Shown here: one piece after another, positions 29,240 through 50,400 of the stretch
Position numbering within the stretch: position 1 is the first letter of the stretch
How the letters are laid out: each line of letters opens with the position of its first letter
Origin: Dimorphilus gyrociliatus
Taxonomy: Eukaryota; Animalia; Annelida
DNA length: 64,000 nt
Assembly (NCBI GenBank): GCA_904063045.1
Contig: CAJFCJ010000017.1
Location: 186,001 to 250,000 of the forward strand
Direction: 5' to 3'
The notes under the pieces: generated by a model
What the model was told of the DNA's origin: nothing
The model's input: the letters and a program-made list of their open reading frames with translations, nothing else
The model's database searches: none
Made by a program: the position numbers and the translations under genes

Positions 29240-30172
29240 TTATCTCTTTATGATCATTGTAGAATAACGAATATCTTTATTTGCATTGTAACATTCAAGA
29301 TGGCAAAATGATAATCACGTCAGCTCTCAGATTTAACCTCTTGTCGGTATAACAACACCGTGTTCTTCATCGTCTAGAGGCTGTTGTTGATTATTAGCTC
29401 TATTACCATCATTAATATTTGAACGATCATTTCGCCGTGGAATACATTGACTTATCCTACTTTTGTACCAAGAGAAGCATCCTATTAAATAACAAGACTT
29501 TATATGAATTAAACTATTTTCATTCTATTTAAAAAGCTACATACCATCGTCTCTTCTGTTGTTATCTCTTCTTTTTACCCGATAATAACCATAAAGTCCA
29601 AGTACTATCAGTATAATAAAAACCGCAATAGATGTGCAAACTGCCACAATAACTATTAAACTTTTTTTACTGTCTTTACTATTCTCATCATTGTGATAAC
29701 ATTCTTCACTCTCTTCGTTAAATTTATGATTTGCTTTGGTACATTTACATTTTGTATTTTCTGTTGCATTTCCATATTGTAAGACTTCTATATCATCTCC
29801 AGTACAAGAACGCCTGAATAAGAAACGTTACCTTTTAAATTATAATCTTCAAACCATGGTTATTTCCTTAATATTATAAGCTTACATTGTTTGACAAGTT
29901 TTCATTTCGCAATTTCCAAATACATCTTCTCTTCTCTTTCTAAATGTTTCAGTATCAGCGAAAGTGCCAGTTGGACAAGCTTGACAGTCGTTGCCTGTAT
30001 TTGTCGCCGTGCAAGCTATGGGTTCTTTTCCTTTGGGGCATTTAATTTCGGCACATCTCATTAGGACATTGTTTCCAAATTTGCAAAACAGATCACCTCT
30101 TCCATTAACAGACTTAAATGACAAGAATAACACATTGAGAAGAAAAGTTATAAAATAAAAAAGAATTGTCAT
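29240..30172 (-). CDS. TNFR-like single-pass receptor, copy C
   Basis: ATG 30172. Exon 30172-29886 (CPKGKEPIAC..GNDCQACPTGTFAD); exon 29813-29545 (RSC..EVLQYGNATENTKCKC, TM LIVIVAVCTSIAVFIILIVLGLYGYY). 3' exons and end coordinate uncertain. Confidence 0.8.
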
Positions 30173-30669: not shown

Positions 30670-33600
30670 TGAAATGATGAAACCCCAAAGAAGGCATACT
30701 ATGAAAAGGAAGAGTGGAGAACTGGCAGGAAAAGGGATTCTCCGCTCTCTTAGAATGTCGTTAGGGCATATTGAAATAGTTTGGACAGAGGTAGAGTGAC
30801 GCAAGAGATACTTAAAAGGCTTGATAACGCATGGGATAAGATAGAAGAACTTCCAAGGACCAAAGAAGTTTTCACTGGTGTTAGACCTTCAAAGGAGAGC
30901 CAGAACATTATCCCTACAAAATAAAGGAAAAACCTGCATGACCAAGATACCTCCCAACAACTCCAGTGATACGGCAAGGATAACAGACCAGAGAGAACAT
31001 CAAGGAAGGCCATGGGGGGAGAACATGCTGGAAACAAGAGAACCAATATATACTCGACATTCCAATAGTGGGCCAATGGATTCCTTCGACATCCCATTGC
31101 AAGGAGGCATTGAAAAGGGTACTAACACTTTATCAATGGGCCTATAAATCAATTGTATTCAAAATACGAGATTTTCTTAAAACAAATGGATTTCGTCAAG
31201 AACGAACTACAGGTAGTTTTCAACAAATAATTAGACGACGTGAAAGGACTGATGAAATGTGATCAGAACTGCCAGATGGCTAAGGAAAATAAGGAATGGT
31301 TAGAAAGAATGGCTTTATGGGTGGATGAAATCTCATACAGAATAAGTTCTACAGCTACAGTGGGCATAGTGGACATATCGCCTCCAGGAGAGTTGTCTGA
31401 ATATATCTATGATGAACATAATATGCCGCTACTGCAATTTGTGTTGAGAACTCAAACAGTTTTAGAAACATACCCTAATGCAACCGATAGGGTTAAGTGT
31501 CATTACTTATTATAGGTCACAAAGGGACTACAACACAAGTATGTTCTGATGTATGAGTATGCAAAAAATCCCTTTCAGGATGTATGGAAGTTGTGGAAGA
31601 GTGGAATTGGAAAGGATGGGCCAACCATTAATGATACTATAGAAAAGGTAAAAATTGGGTTTGGTCAGAGTAGGGAGGAAGGAATGATGGTGTCATTGGC
31701 CATCTTACAGAGAGAGATATCTAATGGTAGAACAACCAGAGGACAGAGCTACTTTGGAAGAGGTATCCTCTCTTTGTTCAGCTATTTTATCTCTGCTACC
31801 TAAAGGGCTATGCAGCAGATTCCTCGAAAAGTTCAGCTTGGAAGTAAATGAGGCCTTTCACTCAGCACCCCTTCGAGAGGAACTACTGAAATTCATAAAT
31901 TCAATATGTAAAAATGAAGAGGCGATGACAATGTACAAGAAAGATGATGCTAAGAATAAGAAATTCAAACCAGCGTCAGTCACAACCCACAAGAAGAGTA
32001 ATTGTCCAGCTGACAAATGCCAACCTGACATCAGAAACTGTGAATTTTTTAGGGACTGTTCTTATGGCAGCAAAAAAGGGATCCTATGAGAGAACAAACT
32101 CTGCTTTAAATGTATTGGAACAGGACATCTGGTTACGGCCTGTCAGTCTGGTGTCAGATGCAACAAGTGCAAAGGGAATCATAACACCTTACTGCATGCC
32201 TCAAAAGAGGCTACATCAGGGTCTGGGACCAGTTATAGCACACCCAGAGTTAAACCCAAATATAAGAAGGTCAGTGGAGTGACTGCTACAAACTCCTTAG
32301 CCATCACACAGTTACCCTTAGTGGTTTTTGAGACTAAAAATAAAAAGGTATCCACACTGATGGATGCAGGTTCGCAGATCTCAATGATAACAAGGAATGT
32401 GCCACCAGACTCAAACTAAACAAAATTGGACAAGTACATCTGCAGTTGTGTACACTCCTTGGAGGGGAAAGTCTGTAACAGACGTAGTAGTAATTCCTCT
32501 ACCACACAAACTAGGTGTCAGAGAGGCAGTTGTTAGAGAAAAGCTCATAGAGGTCCATCAAGAAGGAGAAACCGTAGAGATACACTGAGCACCTTGAATG
32601 GTAAATTCCAGTTAACAAAAAGCTATTTGAATAATGTTTTATAAGAGAGAGACTAAAAGAGCCAGACCCGGAATTTAAAATTCCAAGCCAGATTCTCAGT
32701 GTTACATACAAAGAAAGACTGACGAAGTCCTTGTAAACCTACTACCCCTACAAAAGGAAATAGCCTTTACAAGAGAACTCGCTAGTATAATAGCTATAGT
32801 CTATGACCCATTAGGCCTTGTGGTACCCAGGCTGCTACCCTTTCGGCTACTATTCTCTGAAGTGATAAGGATCAATAGTGACTGGTTTGCACAACTATCA
32901 GGTGAACAGCAGGCAATGTTACAAAAACTCAGAAAATCCACCCAAGAAATAGTAAAATGTAAAAGATTCATTGGTGGGAATAAGCTAAACATGATGAGCA
33001 ATGCTTCACTAAAGGCCCATTGTGCGACAGCCTATTTGGGAGAAGGCAATAAGATGGCCCTACTACCTGCTAAGGCTAGAATCAATGAAAGAAATGTTAA
33101 CTCCATGCCAAAGGCAGAGTTACAGGCTGCAGTAAACGCAGTAAAGCTATATAAAAAACTGAATATACAGGGAGTAGAAGTTAATTTCATACTGATAATA
33201 ATGCCAACTTCAGACAGATACAAAATGCTAATGCTAAGCTGGATGAATTCACAAGGAACAGAATAAGGTACATTACAAGTAATTCGAACCCCTCTTCTTG
33301 GAGATGGATTGAAGGCAAGACAAATCCAGCTGACCTCAGGAAAAAGAAAGCATTCAGATGACCAATGGCTGACACCTGTTATATCTGGTATGACTCAGTG
33401 TGTAGCACTGGGGAATATCTTTAGACCATTTTCTCATAACTGGGAAAAGATGGTGAGGATAGCACAACTTGTAGTGAAGTGGGCACACCTGAATATGCCA
33501 GTATATCAACAAAGGAGACTAGCAATAGCCTACCTGTTGAGGGATGAGCAAAGATGCAATTCAAGCAAGAAGTTCCCTGAGCTGGAACCATTTGAAGACC

Positions 33601-34570
33601 CCTATGGAGTTATCAGAATAAATGGAAGGTTGAGGAGTGTACATGGAATACCATATGATGAACGGCACCCGATTCTAATAATGAAAACATCAGACCTGTT
33701 TAAAGCCATAGTCTTCACAGCTCACAAGGAAGCAGCACATCAGGGTGTACAAAAGACTAGGGCATGGATCAGAAAGAGATTCTGGCTGCACAAAGGAACA
33801 GCACAGATAAAGACCATTGTTGAAACATGTCCCTACTGCATATGTTACAAGACAAGCAGGACTTGCAGTATTTGGCAAGCTCCTCTACCAAATGTGTGTA
33901 CTGAGAAACCACCTCAACCCTTTGGAAATGTAGGAGTAGATCATACAGGACCATATTACACTGATGAAGGTGAACAAAGATTTATTTTGCTTATAGCCTG
34001 CTACCAAACAAGGGCAGTGCACATGGAGAGCTGTACATCAACATCCTTTGCACATACAAAGGAAGCGTGGATTAGGTTTATGACAAGCCGAGGCCACCCA
34101 GAGAATGCACACTCCGATGGTGCAGGAGCATTTAGGAGATTGTCTCAGGAAATGGAAAGGGTGGGAATCTGCTTGAAACTGATACCTGCTAATTCTCCTC
34201 ATAGAGGAGGATTATGGGAATCTTTAGTGAAACCAGTCAAGAGTACCTTGCAAGTGTTAAACAAGGAGACACCAACAGAGGAAATCCTAAGGACTGCAAT
34301 CACTCTGACCGAAAGTATCGTCAACCAAAGACTATTGACAACTATCCTGCATCTTTCTTATGGATCCAATCCAAGGAAAAGAAAAAAATGAGAAACTCCT
34401 ATGAACAAATGGAATCAATCAGGTCTATGCTGGAGAGAATACACATCCACTCTACAAACTATCTCGAAATGGAACAAACAGAGTGGGCGAACCCCGAAGG
34501 TTAATGATCTGGTAGTCTTAGTTAGTGACTCCTTAAGACGCCACAATTGGAAAATAGGGTGTGTATGGAG
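30670..34570 (+). mobile_element. Decayed Bel/Pao LTR retrotransposon lacking RT and recognisable LTRs
   Basis: Higher-GC block. Gag knuckles LCFKCIGTGHLVTAC..RCNKCKGNHNTLLH (~32095-32195); protease LMDAGSQISMI (~32357-32390); RNase H-region YDPLG, AKAR..MPKAEL; GRL..HPILI; integrase HHCC, GVDHTGP, SDGAGAF, SPHRGGLWESLVK; DUF5641-like WREY...PKVNDLV..WKIG. Many stops and frameshifts. Confidence 0.9.
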
Positions 34571-34849
34571 AATAAAAAAGTCTTTGAAAATGAAGGAATA
34601 CAGTTTCGTCTCCTATTTAATTTCTGTCAATAAATGCATAGCTCTCTTTTCGTAGATGCTCTTTGTTTTATTATTAAATCAACATCATGTAGACGCTTCC
34701 AGTGGAAACTAATTTATTATTCGTTTAACAGATAGATATAACGAAATTTTTACAAAATATACAAACAACATTTAATATCTCGACTATAGAAAATTTACAA
34801 TAGTTTTCTATTCTTTCAAATGATTTTCAACATCATTAACTATTTCTTG

Positions 34850-35812
34850 TATTTCTCATCTTTCATCTCTTTATCATCATTGTAGAATAACGAATATCTT
34901 TATTTATTTTTTCCGTGAACAATTTTAAAAGTACCTGTATAGCAACATTGAAGATTGTAAAATTATTACTTTTATCAAATGATAGGAATAAGGAAATGAC
35001 AGATTACCTATATTTATGTCATTTGAAGGTTTTATTGGATTAACAACTGTATTACCATTATTAATATTTGAACGATCATTTCGCCGTGGAATACATTGTC
35101 TTATCCTACTTTTGTACCAAGAGAAGCATCCTATTAAATAACAAGACTTTATATGAATTAAACTATTTTCATTCTATTTAGAAAGCTACATACCATCGTC
35201 TCTTCTGTTGTTGTCTCTTCTTTTTACCCGATAATAACCATAAAGTCCAAGTACTATCAGTATAATAAAAACCGCAATAGATGTGCAAACTGCCACAATA
35301 ACTATTAAAGATTTTTTACTGTTCTCATGTTTGCAATAACATGTTTTACTCTCTTCGTTAAATTTACAATTTGCTGTGGTACATTTACATTTTGTATTTT
35401 CTGTTGCATTTCCATATTGTAAGACTTCTATATCATCTCCAGTACAAGAACGCCTGAATAAGAAACGTTACCTTTTAAATTATAATCTTCAAACCATGGT
35501 TATTTCCTTAATATTATAAGCTTACATTGTTTGACAAGTTTTCATTTCGCAATTTCCAAATACATCTTCTCTTCTCTTTCTAAATGTTTCAGTATCAGCG
35601 AAAGTGCCAGTTGGACAAGCTTGACAGTCGTTGCCTGTATTTGTCGCCGTGCAAGCTATGGGTTCTTTTCCTTTGGGGCATTTAATTTCGGCACATCTAA
35701 TTGGATCACTGTTTCCAAATTCGCAAAACAGATCACCTCCTCCATTAACAGATTTAAATGACAAGAATAACACATAGAGAAGAAAAGTTATGAAACTAAA
35801 ATGAATTCTCAT
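34850..35812 (-). CDS. TNFR-like single-pass receptor, copy D (recent duplicate of C)
   Basis: ATG 35812. Near-identical to copy C at an offset of 5640-5649 bp, with the same exon structure. 3' end uncertain. Confidence 0.8.
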
Positions 35813-36633
35813 TTTACAGATTTACTTGCTATAGCTACTAATATATATGATAGTTACTGTTGCAATCAATATCAATAATATTGATATAGACTTGAAATCA
35901 AGTCTATATCAATCTCGTTGATTAATATGATAGACTATAAATCGGCCTGTATGTTTAATCTGGCTCGAAAATAGATTGTTCTGAGAAGAAATTGTTTTAT
36001 TGTTAATTTCATACTAGTTTATGATTTATGGAACAAATATCTAAAATGAAAGATGTACAATATATTTCCACCGACATTTAATATTTGACTATAGAGAAAG
36101 GTGCGATAGTTTTTTAATCTCTTTAGCATCATTGTAGAACAACGAATATCTTTGCGTCTATAAACGCTTGTTAAAATGATGCTCTATTTGCCTTGATTAC
36201 GCAGAGTATTGACTAGACCCTGTTCAGATCTTTCACTTGCAATTAACTAACTTCCTACAATTGTTCTTTAACATTTGTTATTAATTTCAAATGATTTTAT
36301 AACTTAATTAAATACGAAGTTGAAAACTTTTTATACATCATAAAGAGAGTTATTTCTACTATCATCAAGATAAGGAACAGTTGAGGAAACAGTAATAACT
36401 GTGTCTATTAAAGAGAACATATATATTTATATTATAAAGTAGAAAATCGGAAACCAACTTTTTTCGCCCTCATCCTCTCAACTCTTCGTACGCGATTATG
36501 CAATCGATATGTCTATGAATAGACCTAGGTATTATTAGAAAAAAGAGAGAGAGGTTATTTTTTTTATTAATCTCAAATTAACAAATAAATAAAAAAGAAT
36601 TGCGAAGAACATAAAAATTGATAAAGAAATTTT

Positions 36634-38510
36634 TTAATGATTTGGTAAAAAATAATAATTCATAGACATTCCTAAAGCCTTAAATTCACATGCTTGATTT
36701 TTGTAAAATTTCGTAATGATGTAGTCGGTCTTGTGCAAGATTGTGCATAGTGATTCTGCATGAGCGTAATGTTTCATTGCATATATAAAACTTCGAATAA
36801 ACAATGTACCCAAATCAGATCGGCAAGCAAGGGAACCTATACAAAATAAAGAAAATGAATTGGTGATTTTCTTAATATAAAATTATTTTACCCTCAAGAG
36901 TAGCGTTGATAATGTATGTATACTTTTTTCCATTGCATGTGTCATCTCCTACCAAAGCATCTTGATATGGATAGCTGTGGTCGTTGTTGCTTGCTGACAC
37001 CACTTTGTGTTTATAAAAAGCATTTAGAATGTTTTTTCTTTAATAATTAAATAAATAACTGACTCTTACGGCAAGTCTGGAAAAAGAAGAGTTTTGGTTT
37101 AGTCTTTAGTAATGGGCAGTTTTCTCCATCAAAGAAGTCAATTAAAGAATCGTATTCCAAAAATTTAGAATCTTTCAGTTTAAAAGAATTTTTATTTCCG
37201 TGAGCTAAGATAAAAACAATGAGCGACTTAATGTTCTTCAAATTTGTTTCGTTAGATTTGATGTTGTTCAATTCATTTAGAAATTCCTCTTTAGTATAAT
37301 CTTCCAAAAGGGTAAACTTGTATTTTAGTTTAGTTTCAAACAGCGTTCTCAGATTAAAAGAATCTAATTCTGCTCCTTCTCGCTCCTTAAGGATGTTTAG
37401 AACCAGTACATGATTGAGGCCTTTAGTGTCGTGAATAGTCTGAAATAATGAAAGAAGAACTCTCTGTTCAGTACATAGATAGTAGAAAAATATTAATAAT
37501 TACGCCGCACTCAATGCCGTCTTTTAATTCTTTGGTATCTAAAATTGAATACTTTTCTAACTTGATCGGAATTTTCCCCTTCTTTTCTTCAACATGTACA
37601 GAAAGAATAAAACTCTGTATAATAAATAACAGAAATGGAAAGAAAAATTTCTATATACCATCTTCCTTACAGTCCTTTATGAGTTGTTCTGATGATTCAT
37701 CATTTTCATCCGCTGTAGCGTTAAGTTCGGATTAGAAACAGAATAAAACTCTGTATGATAAATAAAAGAAATGGAAAGACGAATTTCTATATACCACTTT
37801 CATTAGATTCCTCTATGAGTTGTTTCTGTGATTTATCTTTTATAACTAGAGTGCTCTCTTTGGCTAGAAGTCTTCTAGCTAATATTATTAAAATAGCTAC
37901 AAGTAAGATTACAACTGCGACGACTATTATTACTACTTCCAATGTTTCTTGACTTTGCGGTGGACTAGGAGACACTGTATTTGTACGATTTGTAGGTTCA
38001 GGTGAAGCAGCACTAATATTAAGAAATTTCTCAAAGCATGAATTGTCACCGGCTTGATATTCGTATTTTGGATCTGTACATTTGCAAATGTTGTCCATTT
38101 CTTCGTTACCCTTTTCAGCTAAAGTCATGTGTTCATTATCACAGCTCTTTCTGTTTGTGTTAAGTATATTTATTATATAAAAGTTTTTAAATAGCTTTAA
38201 AATCTAATTACTGTTGTTCACAAGTAGTAGTTTTGCAGACGTTAGAATCGGAGCGTTTTTCTCTAAATCCTCCTGTTGTAGAAAAATATCCTTCGGGACA
38301 CTTGACACAATCAGAGCCGTTGTTCTTGATAGAACATTCAGCTGGTTCAAATCCCATAGGACAGTGTACCAAAGCGCAGGTATGAGCAGTATAGTCAGTT
38401 GGTGATAGAAATTTGCAAAAAGCTTTCTTCACAACAGGGACGGTGTTGGATATCCGAATGAAATAGTAGATTAAAAGGATAGTAAAGCTAGACAACAAGA
38501 GCTTCGCCAT
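36634..38510 (-). CDS. TNFR-like receptor-caspase fusion (copy E), about 488-490 aa: signal peptide, CRDs, TM, acidic linker, caspase p20+p10
   Basis: Exons 38510-38212, 38150-37795, 37712-37659, 37586-37504, 37439-37070 (or 37064), 36993 (or 37002)-36892, 36836-36634. All introns are GT-AG, about 55-85 bp and phase-compatible. Caspase motifs: VLVLN..KEREGAELD, FILAHG, CPLLKTKPKLFFFQTC, IINATLEGSLACRSDLGTLFIR, YYFLP. Confidence 0.8.
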
Positions 38511-39020
38511 TTATTGCTTCTTGGTTAACCAGATTAGTAGATAGTCAGCAGTGAAAATTTCAATTTTGAAATAATCTTCTACTTATTTTTTGTTTTTAAA
38601 ATTTAGATTAAAATGAAACTTTTAGCTTTTTTTCTTCAAAAATATCAATTACGGAAAATCTAGTCATAAATCGAATAATTTATAAATGACGGATTTTATG
38701 CGGATCGCAGGAGTATTACAAATATGATTAATATTGCTACTAATCGATTATTTATGATAATCAATATTATGATATACGTAAAAAAAATGAATATTTTATT
38801 TTATTTACAATTATTTCTGTATCACATCAACATTTCAAGTAACAAAAGTAATTTGTAAGAATATTTCATTTGAATGAAACAATGCAGTTAAATTATCTGA
38901 AGAAAAGGTAAACGAAACGTCAACAAATCATTGAGATTTGATTTCTTCTTGTGATTTCTTCTGTTGGGATAATTGGTTAAAGGTAATTAAAGAATCTTTG
39001 TTTTGAAAGATTTCAATAAA

Positions 39021-40391
39021 CTACTTACAGACAACGACGTCACCCATTTCAATGGCATTATCAATAGATTTTGAATTCATCTGCTTCTTCTTTTCAATCG
39101 CTTCCTCTCTCTTTCTTTTCCTTTCGTCCTGATGCATCCTTTTTTTAATTTCCAACACTAAATCCGGATTATTGATAAGCGTGTAGCATCTCCACCATCT
39201 AAATTTTATTTGTTTTCTCTTTAAACGTGATGAACTAGTAGAAGTCGAAGTACTAAAAGCACTTGAACAAGCAGAATCTTCAAGTTTTTTAGTCTTCATT
39301 TCGTCAATAAGCATTTGGCAAAAAAATCTAAGAATCGGATGATTATGATACAACTCTAATCTAAGCATGCCTATATAGGCATTGTAGCCAGAATCTAATT
39401 TTTCAAAGCCACGTACTAGGAGGCATCTATCCGTTCTACTCAGTAAAAGTGCTCCTATTCCAACAGATATTATTATTCTCTTTAGACAACCAAAAATACC
39501 AATGATAACATTAAAGAAGAAGAGAATGAATGTAACAACATGAAATACTCGTCGATTGTTTAGAGCTAAGTATTTTCCTCTTTCCTGTAGAAAAGCGAAC
39601 TTGGCCAATTTCAATTGAAAAATGTTCAACAACAGACTAAATATAACTGTAGGCCTGTAAGATATTATTAATCAATTATAAAGATGATAATCTATTATTG
39701 CGTAATGTTAATACCATAAAGGTAGTAGAAGTTTTAATAACCAATTTAATTGACCCTGAATCAAGGGTCTTACTATTAATAGGACAACCACTACAAAAAT
39801 AAAAAAAAGGAGTAGGGAAACAATTACATAACCCCAGAATAAGTGAGCTATTTGAAATCCGGCATATTTCAACGATGATACAACCGTTGATTCGTGTGAT
39901 TGATTACCACATCCTATAAAATTTCTATTTCCTTTGAAAAGTTTACCAATATGTATTCTGTATATATATATATAAATGAAATATAAAAAAGGGAGAGAGT
40001 TTAATTACTATTTCATTTTCCTTACTTGTATGTAAGTAGCATATGCATTGAAAAGATTATATGAAGTACAAGGGATATATAGATTGCAGCCAAAAATGAA
40101 CCTCGTGCTACAGTTATAATTTTCAGAACTTCCCTTAGTATTTCTGTCAGTTTTTTTCCATGAGATCCTCCGTTAACACTATAGTTAAGTATCTGATAAG
40201 ATATAATAAAGTAGCCGACTTTTAATTTGATAATGAAAGGAAACATACTCTCATAAAATCACTTAAAGTTATTTCGAAATTTGTTGAGCTTTCAGCCAAG
40301 ATAATTGTTTCTTGTAATAAATCTTGAAAAACGGCAAATAGAAAATCAAGAAATCTATGAAAAGTGATGCATAGCTGTAAAACAAAAGAAC

Positions 40392-40422
<31 letters not shown>

Positions 40423-42064
40423 GAAGAAGAGAAGTATTGTTAAAACATTGAACTTTTGTATTTAATAAATGTTTTCTATTTACGGCAAATACTCCTATAC
40501 AACCAACTGAAAAGGTAGCGCAAATTCTCGTGGAAAATGTGAATCCTTTTAGTGAAAATTACTAATTAATATAGGATAAGAGGAAAAATATTATATAATT
40601 TACCATCTATACTAAAGAGATTTAGTTTTGTCTTTATTCTCTTTATGAGGGTTTCGTTGGCTCTGAATATGACAGATGTATGGAAAATTTATTGACATAT
40701 TGTATTTTAAAAACGAACGTTTCATAGTCAACTGGTTTAAGTAGATCTTTAACATATTTATAAGCATTTGTCTCGTTTAAAGGTATGCAAATATCACAAT
40801 TCTAAAGGGGAGAATACACGTACAAATATTGAATATTATTGATAAATATCAATTAAGACTAATTTACCGGATCATTAGACAAAAATGGAATTTGAGATTT
40901 CCACTATATTAATTAAAGAAAGAAATGATAAATTAACTTATTAAACTTAGTTTCTACTACCTTCATCTTTTTTTGGAATAATAATTTTATATTATTGAAT
41001 AAATCGTATATATATCCTAGGCATAAGACAACTTTCACCAATAATAAAGGTATAGATATAGCCAGATATATATACTGGAAATCTTTCTGTTCAAGTATTC
41101 AAAAAGCTACTTTAAATGAGGGTATTATAAATAGAACATACGTAACGACCGCTTTCGGATAGATTGCAGTGGTATAGATAATATCCTCTTAAAACTGTCC
41201 AGGAAATCATAAGAAACGCTCCAATCAAATTAGCAAGAATTACTCTATGCAATCGTATACAAACAAACATTGGATAGATAGCCATACATAAGACTGCAAT
41301 GTTTGCCATTTTGACGATAGCTTTAACCAAAATAAAGCCAAGGTATTAATTAAATAATTAAAAAGACAAATAAATAAGCTTTTTTTTTACTTCCAATCCA
41401 TTTCATCCATTTATTTTCTCTTGCTGCAACGGCGAAGTCGACAAAATTATCCCCCAAAAATAACTCAATAATAAGGTAAGCCATTGAAAGATAAGCAAAA
41501 ACGTAGTATAATCTCCTTTTTGTATCATCTAATAGATTTAGAGGGCTAATCATTTCGTAAAGTAGAATGAATGATTAATTATCCATTCATTAATAAGCCT
41601 AGTTTATAATTGTAATTTACATACTAAACACATCCAGGCCATGCCCAACAGCACGAAAGTTTACAGCGTTTACGTCTGTCCCACGCAGACATAATAAGAA
41701 TGAAAACTAACTGAAAAAAGAGTGAACTTTATGCTTTACATATCAATTAAGATGGATAGAATAGGAATATGAAAACGCTTACGCTTAATGGTCCTGCCGC
41801 AATAATGGAGGTTCTTTGAACTGCAACGATACTCGTACATAGAGTATCATTAGGTCTGTAGAGTTTATACAAATCAAGCATAAACAATACATAAGATAAA
41901 AGTACTAACTCAATCGTTGGTTCGGAAAGATCATAATCAGGAAGAGCAGTTTGTTGCGAATTGGTTTCACTAGTTGCTAAATCGCTTAAGCACCTTCTAA
42001 AATCATTCATATAAGTGTCGTTTAACAGTATATCAATGCAATATTCTTTAGCAGTATCCATCAT
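39021..42064 (-). CDS. STRA6L: STRA6/STRA6-like (RBP receptor family) multi-pass membrane protein, multi-exon
   Basis: Motifs in order across exons: WPG..PLNLL..RRLYY; YPMFVC; GFTFSTRICAT; LFKG..KYAGFQIAHLFWGY; WP; NRRVFHVVTFILFFFNVIIG..SRTDRCLL.RGFEKLDSGY..HNHPILRFFC; RWWRCYTLINNP. Start codon uncertain. Confidence 0.85.
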
Positions 42065-43903
42065 TAAGATTTCTTGATATTTAATACTGGGACTTTGGAA
42101 AAATATTCAATGAAATGAAGATGTTAACACTTCAATATTAATATAAACAGTATATTACATGTGAACTTGAATCGTTAGATTCTGGCTTAAAAGATAAATG
42201 ATATTGAATCTTTTTTAATAAAATATCTGTAAAGAGAAACTAGATTAATTAAGGAATTTTAAGGATGAACGTTAATTTTACATCTACCTACCTTTATTGA
42301 AAAATAAAAATGCTTTGTGTAAATCGATTGTATCTATGCACAAATCAATAGAACTAACCTTGGTCTATTAAAACACAAGGAAAGTAGGCTATTCAACCAC
42401 CGTCTATAATATCTATAACACAATCATATAGAGGAAATCATCTTATTGTAAATGTAACTGATTTACTGATGAGTACTATAATTAAGAAGCAGAAGAAGAT
42501 ACAATAGAGTTAGTTGGCAAAATGATCGTTCAAAGTTGAATGTTCGCTATGAAAATATGGCTGAATATTTATATAGTTATTCCTTATGTAAGTCCTATAA
42601 GGGTAAGTGAGTACATTCGAAGTGGCTTTGTATAACAAACATATAAAATTATATTTTTAAAAAAACGCACTCGACTAAAGATGTCGCTTTTGACTAATGT
42701 TCATGAGAACTTTAATAATTTCTATTTGCTTGTCTAATCAAATAATTTACGTTGTCTCCTTTATCTTTATTAACTATGACAAGAAGCTTTAATTAATGCA
42801 AATAGTATAATATATTCAAAAATCTAGTTCAATTCGTTCATTTTCTACACTTGCAAAATTAAGTAAATTGATAGAATTAACATAAATTCCCTCTGTATTT
42901 TTATTTGTAAAACGACAACAAACCAACTTACTAATGTAATATTATTAAATCGTGATATTACTCATAATACCTTTGCAATTTATGATCATTTCTATACATT
43001 TTGACTAATCACCTATTCATGCAATACACTGCACAGCACATATGTCTATTTTTGGCCTATAATTAATTAGCATAACAAGTAAAAAAATAGTGTTAAAACT
43101 ATTTAAAATAGGTAATCAATACATGCAATTCGAATTTATTGCATTCACATGATATAAAAGAGGGAATATAAAGTATTCATATAAATGTTTCAGTTGGTGT
43201 ATATAGTTTTAATTTAATGATATTCTTTCATCAATGTTTCTTATTAAGCGTTTAATCAAAGTGTTAACCATGGAAAACACCTTATTTTTATTCTTTTTTC
43301 GATGCTTATCAGAAAAACTAATAGAAAAAGAGAGATAGGGAGAGACTTTTGACTTGGAATTAAGCACCATAAAATGAGTGAGAGATTATGTGAAAAACAG
43401 TAAGCCTTTATCATTCAAGATCTGAATACATAAATCACAGTATAAAATAGTAAGGCTTTCCTTTCCTCCCTTTATTACATTCGTTCCTGTCCACAGTCTG
43501 CTAATATAGTTACATTTACCTCCTAACACGCATCATCCAATAGAATTCTCTGTCTCTCAGTCATTGCATTAAAGTAGAATTGTTATGGTTTAATAAATTT
43601 GTATTCTAAATTACAGTATCAATAATAAAACAATCAAATTTGTCGATGTATTAATCGCCAATAACATGAATTTTTATCAAAAATTCTCTAAAATATTAAT
43701 ATTTTTTATAGTTGAACAGTTTTAATTTAATTTCTTTTCCTTTTGGCACTGAGATTAACAGATTCAATCGGCCTATAAACATACAATTTTCATAGTCCTT
43801 TATATTCAGTTAGTCATTACATATGTTATATAAATGTATACAATGTATATGTAAATCAGTCGAATTCAGTTAATAATCTTCTAGATTTCCAACAGTCTTC
43901 TTC

Positions 43904-44519
43904 TTAACTAGATTCGATTTGTTCTTCTACACTAAAAAAATAATACTTTCTGCTCGAATAGTTAATAATTGTCGATAAAGATATGACAAGGAAAATTACT
44001 CCCATGACTTTCAATATATCAATTATACTTCCTTCCATATTATAGAAGATAATATAGATTAATAATGTTCCTGATACGATGCATGACATGATCACGTGAA
44101 TAAAAATACTGTAAAAGTAATATATATAAAGTATATACAAAGAATAGCGGCTTCTCAAAAATGACTTACCTTGAGCAGAGATTACCTAAAGTAATCAATG
44201 TACGTAATTCAATAGTATAACAAGAAAGAAGATAGAAGTTAGTAATAAAAACTATTAAGATTACTCTAAACCATCTTTCAACTCGTTTCTTTTCCAATTG
44301 AATATCTAAATTTTCGCTTAAATCTTGTATTACTGAGAAAATGCTTACTAAAAGCAGAAAAACGCAGATTAGAACAATCGTTAGACCTCTGCAAATAATT
44401 GAAAAGAGTTTTTGGTTTGTTTTGTAAAATTTTACAAATCTACTTACAATGAACAGCATAAAGCTATCCATATTTTTGATAAATTCATATGAAGTATTTG
44501 GCCAAAGAATTGAACGCAT
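43904..44519 (-). CDS. Small predicted four-TM protein, unknown family, two exons
   Basis: The two ORF-track pieces join through a ~63-bp GT-AG intron (AG|gtaagt ... ttttacag|T). Four hydrophobic segments; no family motif recognised. Confidence 0.5.
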
Positions 44520-46055
44520 AGACGAAATGCATAGATAAAACCGTTAATCGTGCCAAGTAGAAAGAGGCAAATAATTATTCTATTCGAAATCATATTTGTT
44601 GTATATTCTAATAAAAGAAAATATAAAAAATAAGATAGAAAATCGTTATAAAAAGAAATTAATATCCAATTAGTAATAATGATAATTTAATACCATAATG
44701 AAAGCGTTTTTATATTTAGGTCATGTATAAATACAAACGATACTAGTTCCATAGTTTTGAGTAGTGTCATTAAATGTAAAAAGAACAAAAATAGAATAGA
44801 ATGTTTTTTCTCTCTACTAAATAGGAATACTATACAAGAGAGTATATCTATTTTAAAACAAAGTAAATTTGCTACTTTCGTATTGAGAATAGAGTTGTAA
44901 AGTAAAAGAATGCAATACAAAAGTGGCTTCTACTATTATAGAAAAGTTCATATTCTAATTGTATTATTTTGATATAAAACTACTATGGGATTAATCAATT
45001 AATCTTTAACATGGAAGTATTACCTATATCTTTAATTATATATTACCTGTATTCAATATGGATTCTTGATGATAAATGAACAGTTTTTAAACTTCCTCTT
45101 TCTTTTCTATACTTAAATCTTATTATTATCAATCTAAACTTTACAACAAAAATATCTTTTATTATTCTTCGATTGATTATAGAAACGTCTAATTTCGAAT
45201 AAAAGTTGCTTCTTTCCTTGTTTGACTGCTATTAACACAATTTTGGAAGATAAGATGCCGCCATGTTATATTAAACAACAAGAAAGAGAGCTTATCTTGT
45301 TTATAACCAATCATCGACCTTGTCTCTTTCGAACTATTTTTTATAGGCTAAATAACGTATATAATACATTCAAAACGTTTGACCGTTAATTTGTTTAATT
45401 AAAAAATTACAATGATTTCAATTTTTCAACTATTTGAATCGATGAACGAGGCGTTCAAGTAAGAATTAAAGGTCATAAAAGAGACAATTAAGGGGAGCAG
45501 TATGAAGTAAGTAAGCCTATATAAATTTAGTTTTTCTATGAAACCCTACATATAGATCGAGGAATTGAATAATTCATAAATTAATAAACAATAACAAAAG
45601 AATATAGGTCAAAGATTTTTATTTTCTAATTGATGATTGATAATACGCAATTATAAACAATAGGAAGAGACTACAATCATTGAAATATGCATTTTCGTCT
45701 AAAAGACAAAAACATATTTTTTACGTAATAATCTTTATTGAAATTGAATAGATCGTTCAAATAATGTAAATATATAAAAGAATGTTATTCTCTGCGAAAC
45801 TTTGACGCAAATCAAATATTCTTCCACTCAATATTTGGATTTTAGAACAAATACGCTTTATCTTAATTCTGCAAATATCAGATAAGATACTCTTCCATCT
45901 AATATTGGAATATTTTATAGAATATATTGATCTTCTAATTAATAAGGTTGTACAGCTAATCATTTAACTTTCTCTATGTTGTCTATGTCTCTCTATATAT
46001 TCAACGTTAAGATATTCAAAGAACAAATCCAAATTATTGCAATAATCCAACAGAA

Positions 46056-46930
46056 CTATAGATTCTCAACTATCTCAATCTCCAATAAAGAATCAGAAGT
46101 TATCGTTTTGTTATCTTGCGAATTATATATTAAAGTTTTACTTTCGGTTTTAAATCGTTTGGAAAATGTAAGACAAGATTGACAAATTAGTTTTAAAGGT
46201 AAAAGTAAATCTGTTGAATAAGCCAGTTTATTTAGACTTTATAATAAAAACAATTAACTTACCTTTTTCATTTGACAAACGCCATATAAAAAGCATCAAG
46301 AATGCAGAATGTACGCCTATAAATATTAATGATAATCGTAGACCTATCCAACTTTCATTGTAGTATCCGCTATAAAGTGAAGTTCTTGAACAGATTTTAA
46401 ATTGATCAATTGATGTATCAAACACAATAAGATAGTAGAAACTTATGCTAAATAGATAAATATCCCAGAAGAGAATATTTGTCATGATACCAATCTTGAA
46501 ATGGAGATACGTGAAAGGATTACAAAGTAGAAAAGCAATAAACCAGATAACAAATGATATACTAATTACTAGACCATAAATAGTCATAATATGCGGATGA
46601 TTTCTGAATATTTGCAAATAGAATATATAGATATATATATACAGTACAGTAATATATTACTATTACATAAGAACTAAACAAGATTTCGTCATCAACTTAC
46701 GGTTCTAAGTAAAATGTAATAATACATATTTTATTTGGCGAGCGAATTGCAGTTGTCCTATTTACGTAATAAGGTTTAATAGTCTTGTCATCCGGTATTA
46801 CTCGATATCTTAGAATTTCGCTAAAATTTTCTTTTGAAATTGCATAATGAAACGTCGGACCGGAGAAAATATTCATAATTGTCCATAAAATTGTTATAAA
46901 TCCACAGAATATATCCAGTTTAGAGATCAT
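46056..46930 (-). CDS. Predicted four-TM protein (claudin/PMP22-like topology), paralogue 1
   Basis: Exon 46930-46701; exon from 46603 (PNHPHIMTIY, three further TMs); probable last exon ending TAG 46058-46056. Homologous to the gene starting at 59636. Confidence 0.6.
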
Positions 46931-47497
46931 AATTCACCGCTGATCGCAAATTTAATAAATCTACTTAATTGTATATTCCCTCAAAAAGTATCCAAGGTAA
47001 ATATTAGTACTTTTTGTCTAATCATCGATTTTATCTTGTCCATAGAATGAAACAAAGGACAGAAAGAGAGAGAGAGGTAGGTTTTTCTTGTTTCCTCGTA
47101 ACAAATATTGGATATAGAATATCTTATTATTAAATATTACTCCCTGACCTAATTCGCCGTTGACTAAGCACTAACCACAGTTAATTTTCATATTATTATA
47201 TTATGAGGTAATGTAGTTATTATACAGAAACTTTAACTATTCATTAAACATCAAAATTCTATATCTAATTATGATTATTCAAGTTTTATATTATGAATAT
47301 TTTGAAAAATATTATCATACTAATCAGTTTCATAGTTGGTAGTTACTTTATCTGTTTAGCTGTTTTAAATCGGTCTTATCTTCTTCTTCTTCTTCTTCTT
47401 CTATTTTTGAATGAATACATATGACAGCCAAATTGCAGATAAAGAAACGATGCATGTTCGAGTGTCTTTTCAAGAGGGATGTATAATGTGCTATCGT

Positions 47498-50400
47498 TCA
47501 ATAGTCGAGGAACAATTGGGGTATTTCTAAGCAAACTGTTCCTCTTAGATCTACTGGAATATCCTTTAAACTATTTGCAAGCTGTCGGTCGTTGTTAACC
47601 TTCTCATTATCTCTTCCATAAGAATAGCCACGATAAATGAAAATTGGCTCGCAATTTAAACAAATTTTTAGATTAAGTTCAAATTCTCTTGCTTGGCTTT
47701 CGTTAAAGTCAAACCATTCGAATTCTATAATCTTGGGATACCTGGATGAAGTATTTAAAGAATCACAGATAAAGATGATCCCATTCCCCATTCTTTTGTT
47801 ATGACCAACAGTTATGTATTCTAGATTCGGACAAAGTTGTAAAGTATCCGCCAAATACCTTGCTTGAGACTGAGTTAAATCGCATCCTCTAAAACTAATT
47901 TCTTTTAGGTTTATAGAGGATTTTATCAATCCCTGGCATATCATTTGAAATGCATATCCAATCTTTGTGGTATCATCCATAAAAATTGCCTCTAAATTTG
48001 AACATGACTGTAAAAGTTCAGCTAGACATTTATTCTGAATTTCTAATAATTCGCAAAAGCCAACGTGTAAAAGTTTCAAACATTTAGACGAGCTCTTTAA
48101 TCCATAGCAGATATAATTAAATCCAGAACCAATATTATCATTCTCATTTAGGAAAATTGACTCTAAATTAGAGCAAAGTTGAAAGAATTCTCCTAATAAT
48201 TTACCCTGATTTTCAGTCAAATTGCAATTTCCAAAGTCTAAGCTTTTTAAATGTTGCGATGAATGTTCCAAACCAGCTAATATATCCTCAATTCCAGTTT
48301 CGATATTTCTATTTCCATACATGGAAAATGACTGCAAATTTTCGCAAAATTTCAATACTTCTTTTAAGCGTTTTCCTTGATTTCTGGTTAAGGAACAATT
48401 GTCCAAATTAAGTTTATTAATTGACCAAAGAGGAAAACTACCAGTTTTTTCAAAATTGAATAGTTTATGAACAATATCAACATCTTTGGGAGATTCGAAA
48501 TTTATCTTTCCGGGGAGACTTTCTATTAAGCTATCCACTTGGTATTCTCGTATACAACAATTGCTTAATTCAAGATCTTTAAGTGTGTGATGGGAGTTCT
48601 TTAATCCGTCAATTAAGACTTTTAATCCATCGCCTAAATTATCATTATCGCTTAAAGATAATGTTTGCAGATTTGTTAAATGGGATAAGGTGTTTCCTAA
48701 ACATTTTACCTGGTTTTCGGTAATACTGCAACTGCTCAAATCGATCAATTGAATACTCGAAGATAACTTTTTTAACCCATCGCATATATCATTGAATGCA
48801 CCAAAGCTCATATTCTTACATCCTATAAGGTGTAGTGATTCGAGTTGGGAACATTCGAGTAGAAGATCACCTAAACATTTAGCTTGAACACCTTCAATAT
48901 CGCTCCAACCAAGATCAAGACATTTAAGAGAAAGTGAAGAGTTCTTTAATTCATTTATCAATGATTTTAAACTATCTCCTTTCAATTGATTATTACCAAG
49001 TAAAACCGACTCCAAATTTGAACAGAAATATAAAACTCTCACAAGATTTTGTAATATTAATTTCTTTGTTAAAAAGCAATTATTAAAGTTTAAACTTTTA
49101 AGAAATTGACAAGAATTCTCAAGCCCGTTAAAGATTGGAATAAATCCCATTTTAATATCTCCATTTTGATTCATACTTAATGATTCTATTGTGCAACAGC
49201 AGCGAAGTGTTTCTCCTAAACTTGCCCCTTGGTGTTCACTCAAATTGCAGTCGTTAAAGCTAAGAGTTTTTAGGCTTTTGCAAGAAGTTTTTAATCCTTT
49301 GCATATGTTCATAAATCCACAACCCATGTATTTATTTCCGTCTAATACCAACGATTCAATATGTGAGCATTGTCCCAGGACTCTACCTAAAATTTTTGCT
49401 TGACTTTCTATTAAGTCATAGCCTAAAAAGTTGAAACTCCTAAATAAATGCGTATGTTGTGTGAGCCCAAAGGAAATTGTAACGTATCCTAAGCCTAATT
49501 CCATATTCTTATCAACTATTTGTTCAACAAAAGTTTCATCTATACGAGAGAGAAGAGCTGAACAGTGTTTTTTCGAAACTATAACATCAATTCTAGGACA
49601 TTGGCAGCCGTTTTGATTTTCATCCAATCGATTCCATTGGAATTTTGGAGGGTTTTTTTGTTTTAAACTACTCCACAAGTACTCTTCGTTAGGAAATTCA
49701 ACAGTTAAATCTTTCATGGAGAATGTCTTTAACGAATTATCGCTCTTCATAACTTTTAAAAAATCGATAAAATCTCTAGAAAGGCTTTCCTTTAATGTTT
49801 TATTCTTTAAGGTTAAATTCTCTAAATATCTACATTCCTTCAAAAGATATTCGTAATGATAGTTTATATAATTTGAGAAATTAGCACATTCATCAATTAG
49901 ACTAATCATAAGAGTAGGACCAAAAGTAACATCAACGATTATATGATCCTCGTGTTGCTCTTCCCACATTTTCAATTCTTGTATACAAAGATTGGTTTTG
50001 CAGTTGGTATTGATATATCTCCTTTTAATAATGAAACCAATTTGTCCAAGGTGGAAATATTTCAAATTTGCATTTGTAATTAAATTGATAAGATTCTTTA
50101 AAAAGTGTTCATCGGAATAGAAATGTTTCGGTGGATTCTTATTGGATAGACAAAGAATTTTCAAATTGGGTGAATGTAATGATAACAGTTCCATAACAAG
50201 CTCTAAATTAAACTCTGAACGTAGTAGGAATATCTCTGAAATATTCCATCCAACCTTTCTAATTAAAGCGGATATAATAACATCGTTTAACTTTAGCTTT
50301 TCCAGATGTAAGCGTTTCTTTTCTCTTACGAATCCAATATCTAATAGATGCTTAACATTTTCACTGTATTCATATATCGCTTGAATTTTCTTTGAAGATT

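What the first reader, a model, noticed from the sequence alone, without database searches (positions are those of the whole stretch)
36634..38510. TNF-receptor-like ectodomain spliced in frame to a complete intracellular caspase
Seen: seven minus-strand exons with short GT-AG introns keep one frame from a signal peptide through TNFR-type CRDs (CVKCPEGYFS; KGNEEMDNICKC), a TM (VVIIVVAVVILLVAILIIL) and a ~70-aa linker into caspase p20 and p10. Established caspase features present: catalytic His (LAHG) and Cys (QTC), S1-pocket Arg (EREG), Gln and Arg (ACRS), and candidate maturation Asp sites in the intersubunit linker (YQD-A, GDD-T). In the canonical pathway TNFRs reach caspase-8 through DD-FADD-DED adaptors; no death fold is present here. 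Inference: ligand-driven clustering could activate the tethered caspase directly by induced proximity, a one-protein death or immune receptor. I am not aware of this architecture being described but cannot search.
Basis: partly seen in the sequence, partly recalled or inferred. Interest (0 to 1): 0.95.

Follow-up and report, generated by a model that had tools for sequence, protein, structure and literature searches.

The report
Receptor with built-in caspase, annelid
A small marine worm (Dimorphilus gyrociliatus) makes one spliced mRNA for a membrane receptor with a TNF-receptor-like outer part and a complete caspase as its inner tail; this wiring was already reported in amphioxus in 2008, and here it is apparently unannotated.

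Summary
Seven minus-strand exons (38510-36634) give one 1,482-nt ORF of 493 aa. A single 1,745-nt contig in run X1 has all six introns removed, and two contigs in run X3 together carry the same six junctions. The genomic DNA run X2 has only the unspliced form. One correction: exon 5 ends at 37064, not at 37070 as I first placed it, so the active site reads QTCRK.

The caspase is solid. Pfam scores the p20 exon at 2.6e-18, it aligns to caspase-2 at the Arg, His and Cys positions, and the p10 is collinear with other caspases. No in-frame ATG lies between M118 and M390, so the caspase cannot be translated separately.

The ectodomain is TNFR-like only through several weak signals that agree: OPG and CD40 sequence hits, language-model features, and an AlphaFold model whose best structural matches are nearly all TNFR-family, with none significant.

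The fusion uses a donor that swallows the ancestral stop (G|GTATATAG, as in short-tailed paralogues). Exon 3 arose by a 136-bp tandem duplication.

The architecture is not new. Zhang et al. 2008 (PMC2575513) validated TNFR-caspase transmembrane proteins in amphioxus by cDNA. This copy is an apparently unannotated annelid gene and probably an independent fusion. Activation by clustering is inferred, not shown. An earlier scan note on this window (s1-082317) covers the tandem array.

The parts
38511..38548 (-). 5' UTR (at least this much)
   Evidence: The X1 contig starts at 38548; the X3 contig reaches 38570.
38212..38510 (-). Exon 1: ATG, signal-peptide-like helix (aa 1-22), Cys-rich modules with C32, C45, C50, C59, C68, C71, C92, C97 (includes CVKCPEGYFS)
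   Evidence: The 38212/38150 junction is in X1 and X3. AF2 model pLDDT 75; best structural matches are TNFRSF CRDs.
37795..38150 (-). Exon 2: last CRD modules (C103, C122, C124, C138; KGNEEMDNICKC), Ser/Pro/Thr stalk with N-glycosylation sites, TM helix, basic stop-transfer and start of tail
   Evidence: Weak CD40/OPG matches. Atlas features point mostly to TNFR_c6 clusters.
37880..37936 (-). Transmembrane helix VVIIVVAVVILLVAILIIL (aa 172-190), followed by ARRLLAK
   Evidence: Kyte-Doolittle 19-residue mean of 3.96; position.
37659..37712 (-). Exon 3 (54 nt, acidic linker ADENDESSEQLIKDCKED), a duplicate of the end of exon 2
   Evidence: Junctions 37795/37712 and 37659/37586 are in X1 and X3. 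Duplication shown.
37597..37841 (-). 136-bp tandem duplication (copies 37733-37841 and 37597-37705, 83% identical). Each copy carries the G|GTATATAG donor with the in-frame TAG just inside the intron.
37504..37586 (-). Exon 4: end of the linker and N-terminal start of the caspase domain (KYSILDTKELKDGIECG)
   Evidence: Junctions 37586/37659 and 37504/37439 are in X1 and X3.
37064..37439 (-). Exon 5: caspase p20 with R284 (EREG), H344 (LAHG; codon 37200-37202), Q385 and C387 (QTCRK; Cys codon 37071-37073)
   Evidence: Pfam PF00656, 2.6e-18, 67 bits. Caspase-2 1.4e-13 with the motifs aligned. Donor at 37063/62 from the RNA joints.
36892..37002 (-). Exon 6: intersubunit linker (YQD404|A, GDD410|T) and start of p10
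36634..36836 (-). Exon 7: rest of p10 (GSLACR432SDLGTLFIR ... YYFLPNH) and TAA stop
   Evidence: Collinear phmmer matches to the p10 of library caspases.
36409..36633 (-). 3' UTR (at least this much)
   Evidence: The X1 contig ends at 36409.
35186..35812 (-). Paralogue A: short-tailed TNFR-like receptor with the same intron-1 position. Its ORF ends GAT G|GT ATG TAG.
   Evidence: Intron 1 is spliced in X1/X3 loose ends.
29537..30172 (-). Paralogue B: near-copy of A, with the same terminal GGTATGTAG

Best explanation
Shown: this is a real, expressed, single gene of the annelid Dimorphilus gyrociliatus. Its product is a 493-aa type I membrane protein made of a signal-peptide-like N-terminus, about 150 aa of TNFR-type cysteine-rich modules and a glycosylated stalk, one TM helix, an acidic linker of about 55 aa with no death fold, and a complete caspase (p20 + p10) whose catalytic dyad and S1 pocket are intact. 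Shown: the gene sits in a tandem array of short-tailed TNFR-like receptors. The splice donor it uses overlaps what is the last sense codon and stop in paralogues A and B, and exon 3 is a 136-bp duplicate of the end of exon 2. The caspase has no start codon of its own. Inferred: a multivalent ligand, possibly one of the genome's TNF-like ligands, clusters the receptor. The tethered caspase domains then dimerise, cut themselves at Asp in the intersubunit linker (D404, D409/410) and perhaps in the juxtamembrane linker (D253, D268), and cleave substrates at or away from the membrane. That would give cell death or immune signalling without DD/FADD/DED adaptors.
For: Gene and mRNA: one search shows the spliced contigs in X1 and X3, no joined form in DNA run X2, and bin depths that fit spliced-only transcripts; one search gives the 1,482-nt ORF. 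No in-frame Met lies between M118 and M390. Caspase: and the consensus. TM and topology. TNFR-likeness: OPG and CD40 account for 6 of the 9 PDB sequence hits at E<=10, and OPG is the only hit for the exon 1 piece; feature search; the top 44 structural rows are all TNFRSF. Origin. Precedent for the architecture and for this reading: PMC2575513. That enforced oligomerisation of membrane-anchored or FKBP-fused caspase domains activates them is established knowledge, cited by that paper as Fan et al. 1999 and otherwise recalled by me. First-stage notes, untested here, report TNF ligands in this genome.
Against: No TNFR match is statistically significant: Pfam TNFR_c6 is silent on the exon pieces, the best PDB E-value is 0.47, Foldseek gives E>=0.2 and VIA-align Z<=4.2. 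QTCRK replaces the Gly that is at least 90% conserved in QACRG, and the p10 is divergent (ACR for SWR; no Pfam or PDB hit on its own), so activity is unproven. The gene is known from one species only. There is no protein-level, ligand or phenotype evidence. The intersubunit linker is short, as in effector caspases, which are normally activated by cleavage from another caspase rather than by proximity alone.
Confidence: 0.6

Rival explanations
1. The tethered caspase is a regulator rather than a ligand-triggered killer. It would be a catalytically weak or inactive caspase-like module at the membrane that heterodimerises with, sequesters or is cleaved by soluble caspases, in the way cFLIP does, or a dependence-receptor-like substrate.
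For: QTCRK departs from QACxG at two positions, including the conserved Gly. The p10 is divergent, with the SWR Trp replaced by Cys. The intersubunit linker is short and effector-like.
Against: His, Cys, the oxyanion Gly and all three S1 residues are retained. The related library caspases that matched the p10 (P0021, P0055, P0100) show similar p10 substitutions.
Confidence: 0.15
2. The receptor is real and active, but its ectodomain does not bind TNF. It would be a generic TNFR/ephrin-receptor-like Cys-rich module that recognises something else (microbial, damage or self/non-self cues), as part of a fast-diverging, locally duplicated immune array.
For: There is no significant TNFR match. The atlas features for exon 1 point first to Ephrin_rec_like/ELAPOR clusters. 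The paralogues are only 25-36% identical. A NACHT gene lies nearby. The genome paper says that the expanded families are locally duplicated immune genes.
Against: The structural and sequence near-matches are overwhelmingly TNFRSF proper. TNF-like ligands are reported in the genome by untested notes.
Confidence: 0.15
3. This is a young, selectively neutral read-through or fusion transcript: it is transcribed and spliced but has no selected function, and the protein is unstable or not made.
For: Only one species is known. The exon-3 duplication is still 83% identical. Fusions of neighbouring genes do arise by chance.
Against: The frame is kept over three linker junctions with no stop. The spliced form is the only one assembled in two studies, at a depth similar to the neighbouring gene. 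The caspase has no start of its own, so if this transcript were useless the caspase would be lost, yet its catalytic residues are intact.
Confidence: 0.1

Closest known systems
Amphioxus TNFR-caspase hybrid proteins (Brafl1_82667; GenBank EU049585/EU049586; Zhang et al. 2008, PMC2575513)
   Same: Both have an extracellular TNFR-type domain, one TM and an intracellular caspase in one ORF of almost the same size (476 vs 493 aa). Both are supported by cDNA or RNA, both lack a death domain, and both are read as a shortcut from receptor to caspase.
   Different: Amphioxus is a chordate and this is an annelid. The amphioxus proteins are said to keep QACXG, whereas this one has QTCRK. None of the 150 caspase representatives nearest to this p20 has a TM and a Cys-rich N-terminus, and the fusion here has a local, traceable origin, so an independent fusion is likely. 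Orthology was not tested directly.
Death receptors of the TNFR superfamily with the DISC (Fas/TNFR1/DR4/5 + FADD + caspase-8)
   Same: Both have a type I receptor with TNFR-type CRDs, and in both the end point is activation of a caspase by receptor clustering (established knowledge).
   Different: There is no death domain, no adaptor and no DED. The protease is covalently attached about 55-75 residues after the membrane.
Engineered oligomerisable caspases (FKBP/CID-caspase fusions, membrane-anchored caspase-8 chimeras)
   Same: A caspase catalytic domain is fused to a module whose clustering drives activation. PMC2575513 cites this as support (Fan et al. 1999).
   Different: Those are artificial constructs based on initiator caspases. 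This is a natural gene with a short, effector-like intersubunit linker.
Unusual-prodomain caspases of annelids (kinase-, TIR-, ROC-, ANK-, Z-binding-caspases; Krasovec et al. 2024, PMC11463336)
   Same: They belong to the same phylum-level pattern of species-specific domain shuffling onto caspases.
   Different: That survey, which included D. gyrociliatus, lists no TNFR or transmembrane caspase. All the partners listed are cytoplasmic domains.

Membership tests
Caspase (peptidase family C14A) | Match to the Pfam Peptidase_C14 model above the gathering score | tested here: met
   Exon 5 alone scores 67 bits against a cut-off of 21.4, E 2.6e-18.
Caspase (peptidase family C14A) | Catalytic His-Cys dyad in the SHG and QACxG contexts | tested here: met
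   LAHG (H344) and QTCRK (C387) align to SHG and QACR of caspase-2. The A-to-T and final G-to-K changes are deviations.
Caspase (peptidase family C14A) | S1 pocket Arg (p20), Gln (p20) and Arg (p10), which give Asp specificity | tested here: met
   R284 and Q385 by alignment. R432 lies in the A-T-x-x-G-x-x-x-x-R-x-x-x-G-x-x-F-I block that aligns to the p10 of library caspases.
Caspase (peptidase family C14A) | Complete p10 subunit up to the C-terminal YF-x-P strand | tested here: met
   phmmer alignments are collinear over aa 281-491 of the protein (positions 42-252 of the 254-aa query, aa 240-493), and the p10 alone hits p10 regions. Pfam and PDB are silent on exon 7 alone.
Caspase (peptidase family C14A) | Asp-directed proteolytic activity | not testable with these tools
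   This needs an enzyme assay.
TNF receptor superfamily | Significant match to TNFR_c6 or another TNFR CRD model | tested here: inconclusive
   There was no hit at E<=1 on the exon pieces of this gene or of four paralogues. The main CRD is split by intron 1, and the spliced protein could not be submitted because it has no reference.
TNF receptor superfamily | CRD fold (A/B modules, elongated ladder of disulfides) | tested here: inconclusive
   The AF2 model of exon 1 has pLDDT 75. The top Foldseek hits are DR6, OX40, p75NTR and TNFR1/2 at E>=0.2. The top 44 VIA-align rows are all TNFRSF but Z is at most 4.2. The spacing C-x5-C-x18-C with KGN...DNIC matches, from my recollection of the OPG sequence, a module of OPG; tool alignments to CD40 and OPG cover only part of it.
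TNF receptor superfamily | Type I membrane topology | tested here: met
   N-terminal hydrophobic helix, a single TM at aa 172-190, and a positive-inside ARRLLAK. No dedicated signal-peptide predictor was available.
TNF receptor superfamily | Binds a trimeric TNF-family ligand | not testable with these tools
   This needs binding assays. Candidate ligands are only noted by first-stage readers.
Death receptor subfamily | Cytoplasmic death domain | tested here: not met
   The exon 2 piece, which holds the first 26 residues of the tail, has no Pfam death-fold hit; exons 3 and 4 were not scanned. The segment between the TM and the caspase is about 55-75 aa, acidic and of low complexity, which is too short for a death fold.
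TNFR-caspase hybrid receptors (amphioxus type) | TNFR-like ectodomain, TM and caspase in one transcript-supported ORF | tested here: met
   compared with PMC2575513.
TNFR-caspase hybrid receptors (amphioxus type) | Common descent with the amphioxus genes | not tested
   The amphioxus sequences could not be fetched. Indirect evidence favours an independent origin.

The most novel reading that the evidence does not exclude
This is an independently evolved, adaptor-free death or immune receptor in a protostome. It was born when a splice donor swallowed the stop codon of a short-tailed TNFR-like gene and joined it to a downstream caspase. It is catalytically active and triggered directly by ligand-driven clustering. 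Together with the amphioxus genes, that would show receptor-caspase 'short circuits' to be a recurrent and functional solution. It would also provide a compact natural test of the induced-proximity model in a culturable animal.
Probability: 0.35. Interest if true: 0.7.

Novelty: new member of a known kind. Interest (0 to 1): 0.5.

Why it matters
No paper I found with these tools reports a functional test of a TNFR-caspase protein. The amphioxus genes were described in 2008 only as predicted 'shortcuts'. This annelid gene is small (1.9 kb and 493 aa) and clearly expressed, and it comes from a laboratory-culturable animal with a 74-Mb genome. It is missing from the public protein sets I could search and from the 2024 survey of annelid caspases.

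It offers a second, probably independent, example of a receptor wired straight to a caspase, with a readable birth mechanism: a stop codon hidden inside a donor site, followed by duplication of a linker exon. It could be used to test whether clustering alone can fire a membrane-tethered caspase.

For annotation, it shows that the caspase and TNFR repertoires of this genome are under-counted.

Tried and rejected
- **Exon 5 boundary.** My first model ended exon 5 at 37070 (QTC|L...). The RNA joints place the donor at 37063/62, so I rejected it.
- **Pfam on ectodomain pieces.** Pfam found no TNFR_c6 on the ectodomain exon pieces of this gene or of four paralogues.
- **Paralogue profile.** A profile of five paralogue exon-1 pieces found nothing in PDB sequences.
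- **Exon 7 alone.** The p10 exon on its own hit nothing in Pfam or PDB. It was rescued only by phmmer against fetched caspases.
- **The gene's own protein.** An exhaustive HMMER search of 1.84 billion representatives with the p20 exon gave at most 45% identity, so the gene's own protein is not in that library. Its nearest relatives are decapod, mite and mollusc multi-caspase, CARD, DED or zinc-finger caspases. None has a TM helix together with a Cys-rich N-terminus.
- **Literature.** A search for 'transmembrane caspase' and one for the two Pfam names together each returned 0 papers.
- **Source organism.** My working guess of a placozoan was rejected. The contig is CAJFCJ010000017.1 of GCA_904063045.1, which is Dimorphilus gyrociliatus.
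- **Retrocopy.** A retrocopy as the source of the intronless contigs was rejected, because DNA run X2 shows none of the six joints.
- **Not done.** I did not run Pfam, AlphaFold or database searches on the full spliced 493-aa protein.

Full report
**1. What is in the sequence**

The window is AT-rich (31% GC). On the minus strand between 38510 and 36634, seven exons separated by GT-AG introns of 55-82 nt give one ORF of 1,482 nt (493 aa). The exons are:
- exon 1: 38510-38212
- exon 2: 38150-37795
- exon 3: 37712-37659
- exon 4: 37586-37504
- exon 5: 37439-37064
- exon 6: 37002-36892
- exon 7: 36836-36634

**2. Transcript evidence**

I laid the contigs of four public runs on 35500-40000.
- Run X1 (2017, study P1) holds one 1,745-nt contig from 38548 to 36409 with all six introns removed and no mismatches.
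- Run X3 (2020, study P2) holds a 932-nt contig that joins the last 116 nt of exon 2 through exons 3, 4, 5 and 6 to exon 7. It also holds a 610-nt contig that joins exons 1 and 2.
- Run X2, the probable source DNA, holds one unspliced 4,750-nt contig and none of the six joints. The joined form is therefore RNA, not a retrocopy.

The neighbouring gene is also spliced in X1 and X3, which confirms that both are RNA libraries.

In the bins that contain introns 2-4, the X1 and X3 depths equal the contig depth times the exonic fraction. For example, 149.8 x 54/151 = 53.6. No intron-retaining isoform was therefore assembled.

The joints correct one detail. The exon 5 donor is at 37063/62, so the active-site pentapeptide reads QTCRK and the next residue is M390.

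A contig is not a single molecule. Even so, exon 3 (54 nt) and exon 4 (83 nt) are short enough that ordinary reads must bridge exons 2-3-4 and 3-4-5.

**3. The caspase cannot be made on its own**

The in-frame Met residues are at 1, 52, 108, 118, 390, 447, 483 and 485. None lies between the ectodomain and a point after the catalytic Cys. The ATGs inside exon 3 and intron 3 are out of frame and terminate quickly.

**4. The caspase half**

- Exon 5 alone matches Pfam Peptidase_C14 at 2.6e-18. Its best match among solved structures is caspase-2 at 1.4e-13. In that alignment R284 (EREG), H344 (LAHG) and Q385/C387 (QTCR) line up with the S1 Arg, SHG and QACR.
- Exon 7 alone is silent in Pfam and PDB.
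- In a sandbox phmmer run against the 160-odd caspases fetched from the library, residues 281-491 align collinearly with full p20+p10 domains.
- The p10 part alone hits the p10 of many of those caspases. The block A-T-x-x-G-x-x-x-x-R432-x-x-x-G-T-x-F-I and the terminal YFLP are conserved (consensus).

There are deviations. The Gly of QACRG, which is at least 90% conserved, is Lys here, and SWR is ACR. The intersubunit linker is short (about 27 residues) and holds D404, D409 and D410.

**5. The receptor half**

Residues 1-22 form a hydrophobic N-terminal helix. Residues 172-190 are a very hydrophobic TM segment (Kyte-Doolittle mean 3.96) followed by ARRLLAK. Between them lie 12 cysteines, three N-x-S/T sites and a Ser/Pro/Thr stalk.

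Pfam finds no TNFR_c6 on the exon pieces. However, intron 1 cuts the main CRD, and the spliced protein could not be submitted.

Four kinds of weak evidence agree:
- The only PDB sequence hit for exon 1 is osteoprotegerin (E 0.47), aligned over CPxGF...C-x2-CP[DE]G[FY]FS.
- Exon 2 finds CD40 and OPG over C-D-x...KG-x-x-E-x-D-x-IC-x-C.
- A language-model feature search gives Ephrin_rec_like/TNFR clusters for exon 1. For exon 2 it gives mostly TNFR_c6 clusters, at scores of 0.76-0.87.
- An AlphaFold model of exon 1 (pLDDT 75) has DR6, OX40, p75NTR, TNFR1/2, DcR3, RANK and HVEM as its best Foldseek matches (E>=0.2). The top 44 VIA-align rows are all TNFR-superfamily members (Z<=4.2, 50-58 residues aligned at about 3.3-3.9 A for most rows, up to about 7 A for a few).

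None of these is significant alone, so I call the ectodomain TNFR-like with moderate confidence.

The cytoplasmic linker (55 aa, 15 acidic) is too short for a death fold. The exon 2 piece, which holds the first 26 residues of the tail, has no Pfam death-fold hit; exons 3 and 4 were not scanned.

**6. How the fusion arose**

The gene is the last member of a tandem array of TNFR-like genes. This array is the subject of an earlier first-stage note on the same window (s1-082317). The paralogues share the intron-1 position.

Paralogues A and B end GAT G|GT ATG TAG. The fusion gene's exon 2 ends GAA AGT G|GT ATA TAG. The fusion gene therefore uses as its donor a GT that overlaps the last codons of the ancestral short-tailed ORF, and the ancestral stop now lies in intron 2.

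Exon 3 plus the first 60 nt of intron 3 is a 136-bp tandem duplicate of the end of exon 2 plus intron 2. The copies are 83% identical over 109 nt. Exon 4 already encodes the N-terminal part of the caspase domain.

**7. Organism and annotation**

A neighbouring intronless nucleoside transporter has its own exact copy in the protein collection. Its nearest named relatives are annelids, best Dimorphilus gyrociliatus.

The NACHT ORF at 47498-51949 is on record on NCBI GCA_904063045.1, contig CAJFCJ010000017.1. That assembly is D. gyrociliatus (PMC10212961; lineage). The genome paper reports a median intron of 66 bp and locally duplicated immune gene families (PMC7854359).

No called gene is on record for window 37498-47497. 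An exhaustive HMMER search of 1.84 billion cluster representatives found nothing above 45% identity to exon 5. The fusion gene therefore appears to be unannotated.

**8. What is known**

Zhang et al. 2008 (PMC2575513) described amphioxus 'TNFR-caspase' hybrid genes. [quoted passage not shown] Model Brafl1_82667 is 476 aa, there are three loci, and the authors interpret them as a shortcut from inflammatory signals to cell death. So the architecture and the idea are not new.

The 2024 survey of lophotrochozoan and annelid caspases, which included D. gyrociliatus, lists kinase, TIR, ROC, ANK, Z-binding and other prodomains but no TNFR or transmembrane caspase (PMC11463336). Among the 150 representatives nearest to this p20, none has a TM helix together with a Cys-rich N-terminus. 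Their partner domains are CARD, DED, zinc fingers, ankyrin, Death and LRR.

Together with the local birth marks, this favours an independent fusion in the annelid lineage. I could not fetch the amphioxus sequences to test that directly.

**9. Mechanism and verdict**

The anatomy is shown. The mechanism is inferred: clustering of the ectodomain brings the tethered caspase domains together, and they dimerise, autoprocess at linker Asp residues and cleave substrates.

The rivals are:
- a regulatory or weakly active pseudo-caspase-like tail
- a ligand other than TNF
- a young fusion without a selected function

This is a new member, the first I can find in a protostome, of a known but functionally untested kind of receptor.

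Noticed in passing
window 35669-36100 joined to 36819-36862 (+ strand): A 476-nt X1 contig (depth 29) carries a joint with canonical GT..AG on the plus strand (AAAG|GTGCG ... ATCAG|ATCGG). This looks like a spliced antisense transcript overlapping paralogue A's 5' end and caspase exon 7, or else an assembly chimera.
   Followed up: partly
window 30750-34700 (+ strand): A retroelement with higher GC carries an integrase (Integrase_H2C2, 2.2e-11). It sits between the two near-identical TNFR-like paralogues A and B.
   Followed up: partly
window 38212-38510 and paralogues (alignment A1): Cys32 and Cys92 are both present in three paralogues and both absent in the other two (C92 replaced by Trp). 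This suggests an extra, optional disulfide bridging the first and second modules.
   Followed up: no
window 47498-51949 (- strand): A single 1,483-aa ORF carries a NACHT domain (1.2e-09). It is annotated in the public record, so an NLR-like gene lies 9 kb from the receptor array.
   Followed up: partly
window 37498-47497 (L001 14453-24452): The public gene calls on record show nothing here, although RNA contigs show at least two expressed spliced genes: the fusion gene and a STRA6-like RBP_receptor gene at 39021-39963 and beyond.
   Followed up: partly
window 35186-35194 and 29537-29545: Paralogues A and B end in GGTATGTAG, a possible donor over their stop codon, like the fusion gene.
   Followed up: no
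run X6 against window 35500-40000: A 2024 DNA run with the same species label as the source holds almost none of this locus (3% of words; only 31-36-nt pieces with mismatches). It may be another strain, a cryptic species or a different library type.
   Followed up: no
window 13526-15286 (+ strand): An intronless 586-aa concentrative nucleoside transporter (SLC28/CNT) is 69% identical to a second D. gyrociliatus protein on another scaffold, and 82-85% identical to proteins from unnamed Logan assemblies. This points to recent paralogues or close relatives in public runs.
   Followed up: partly
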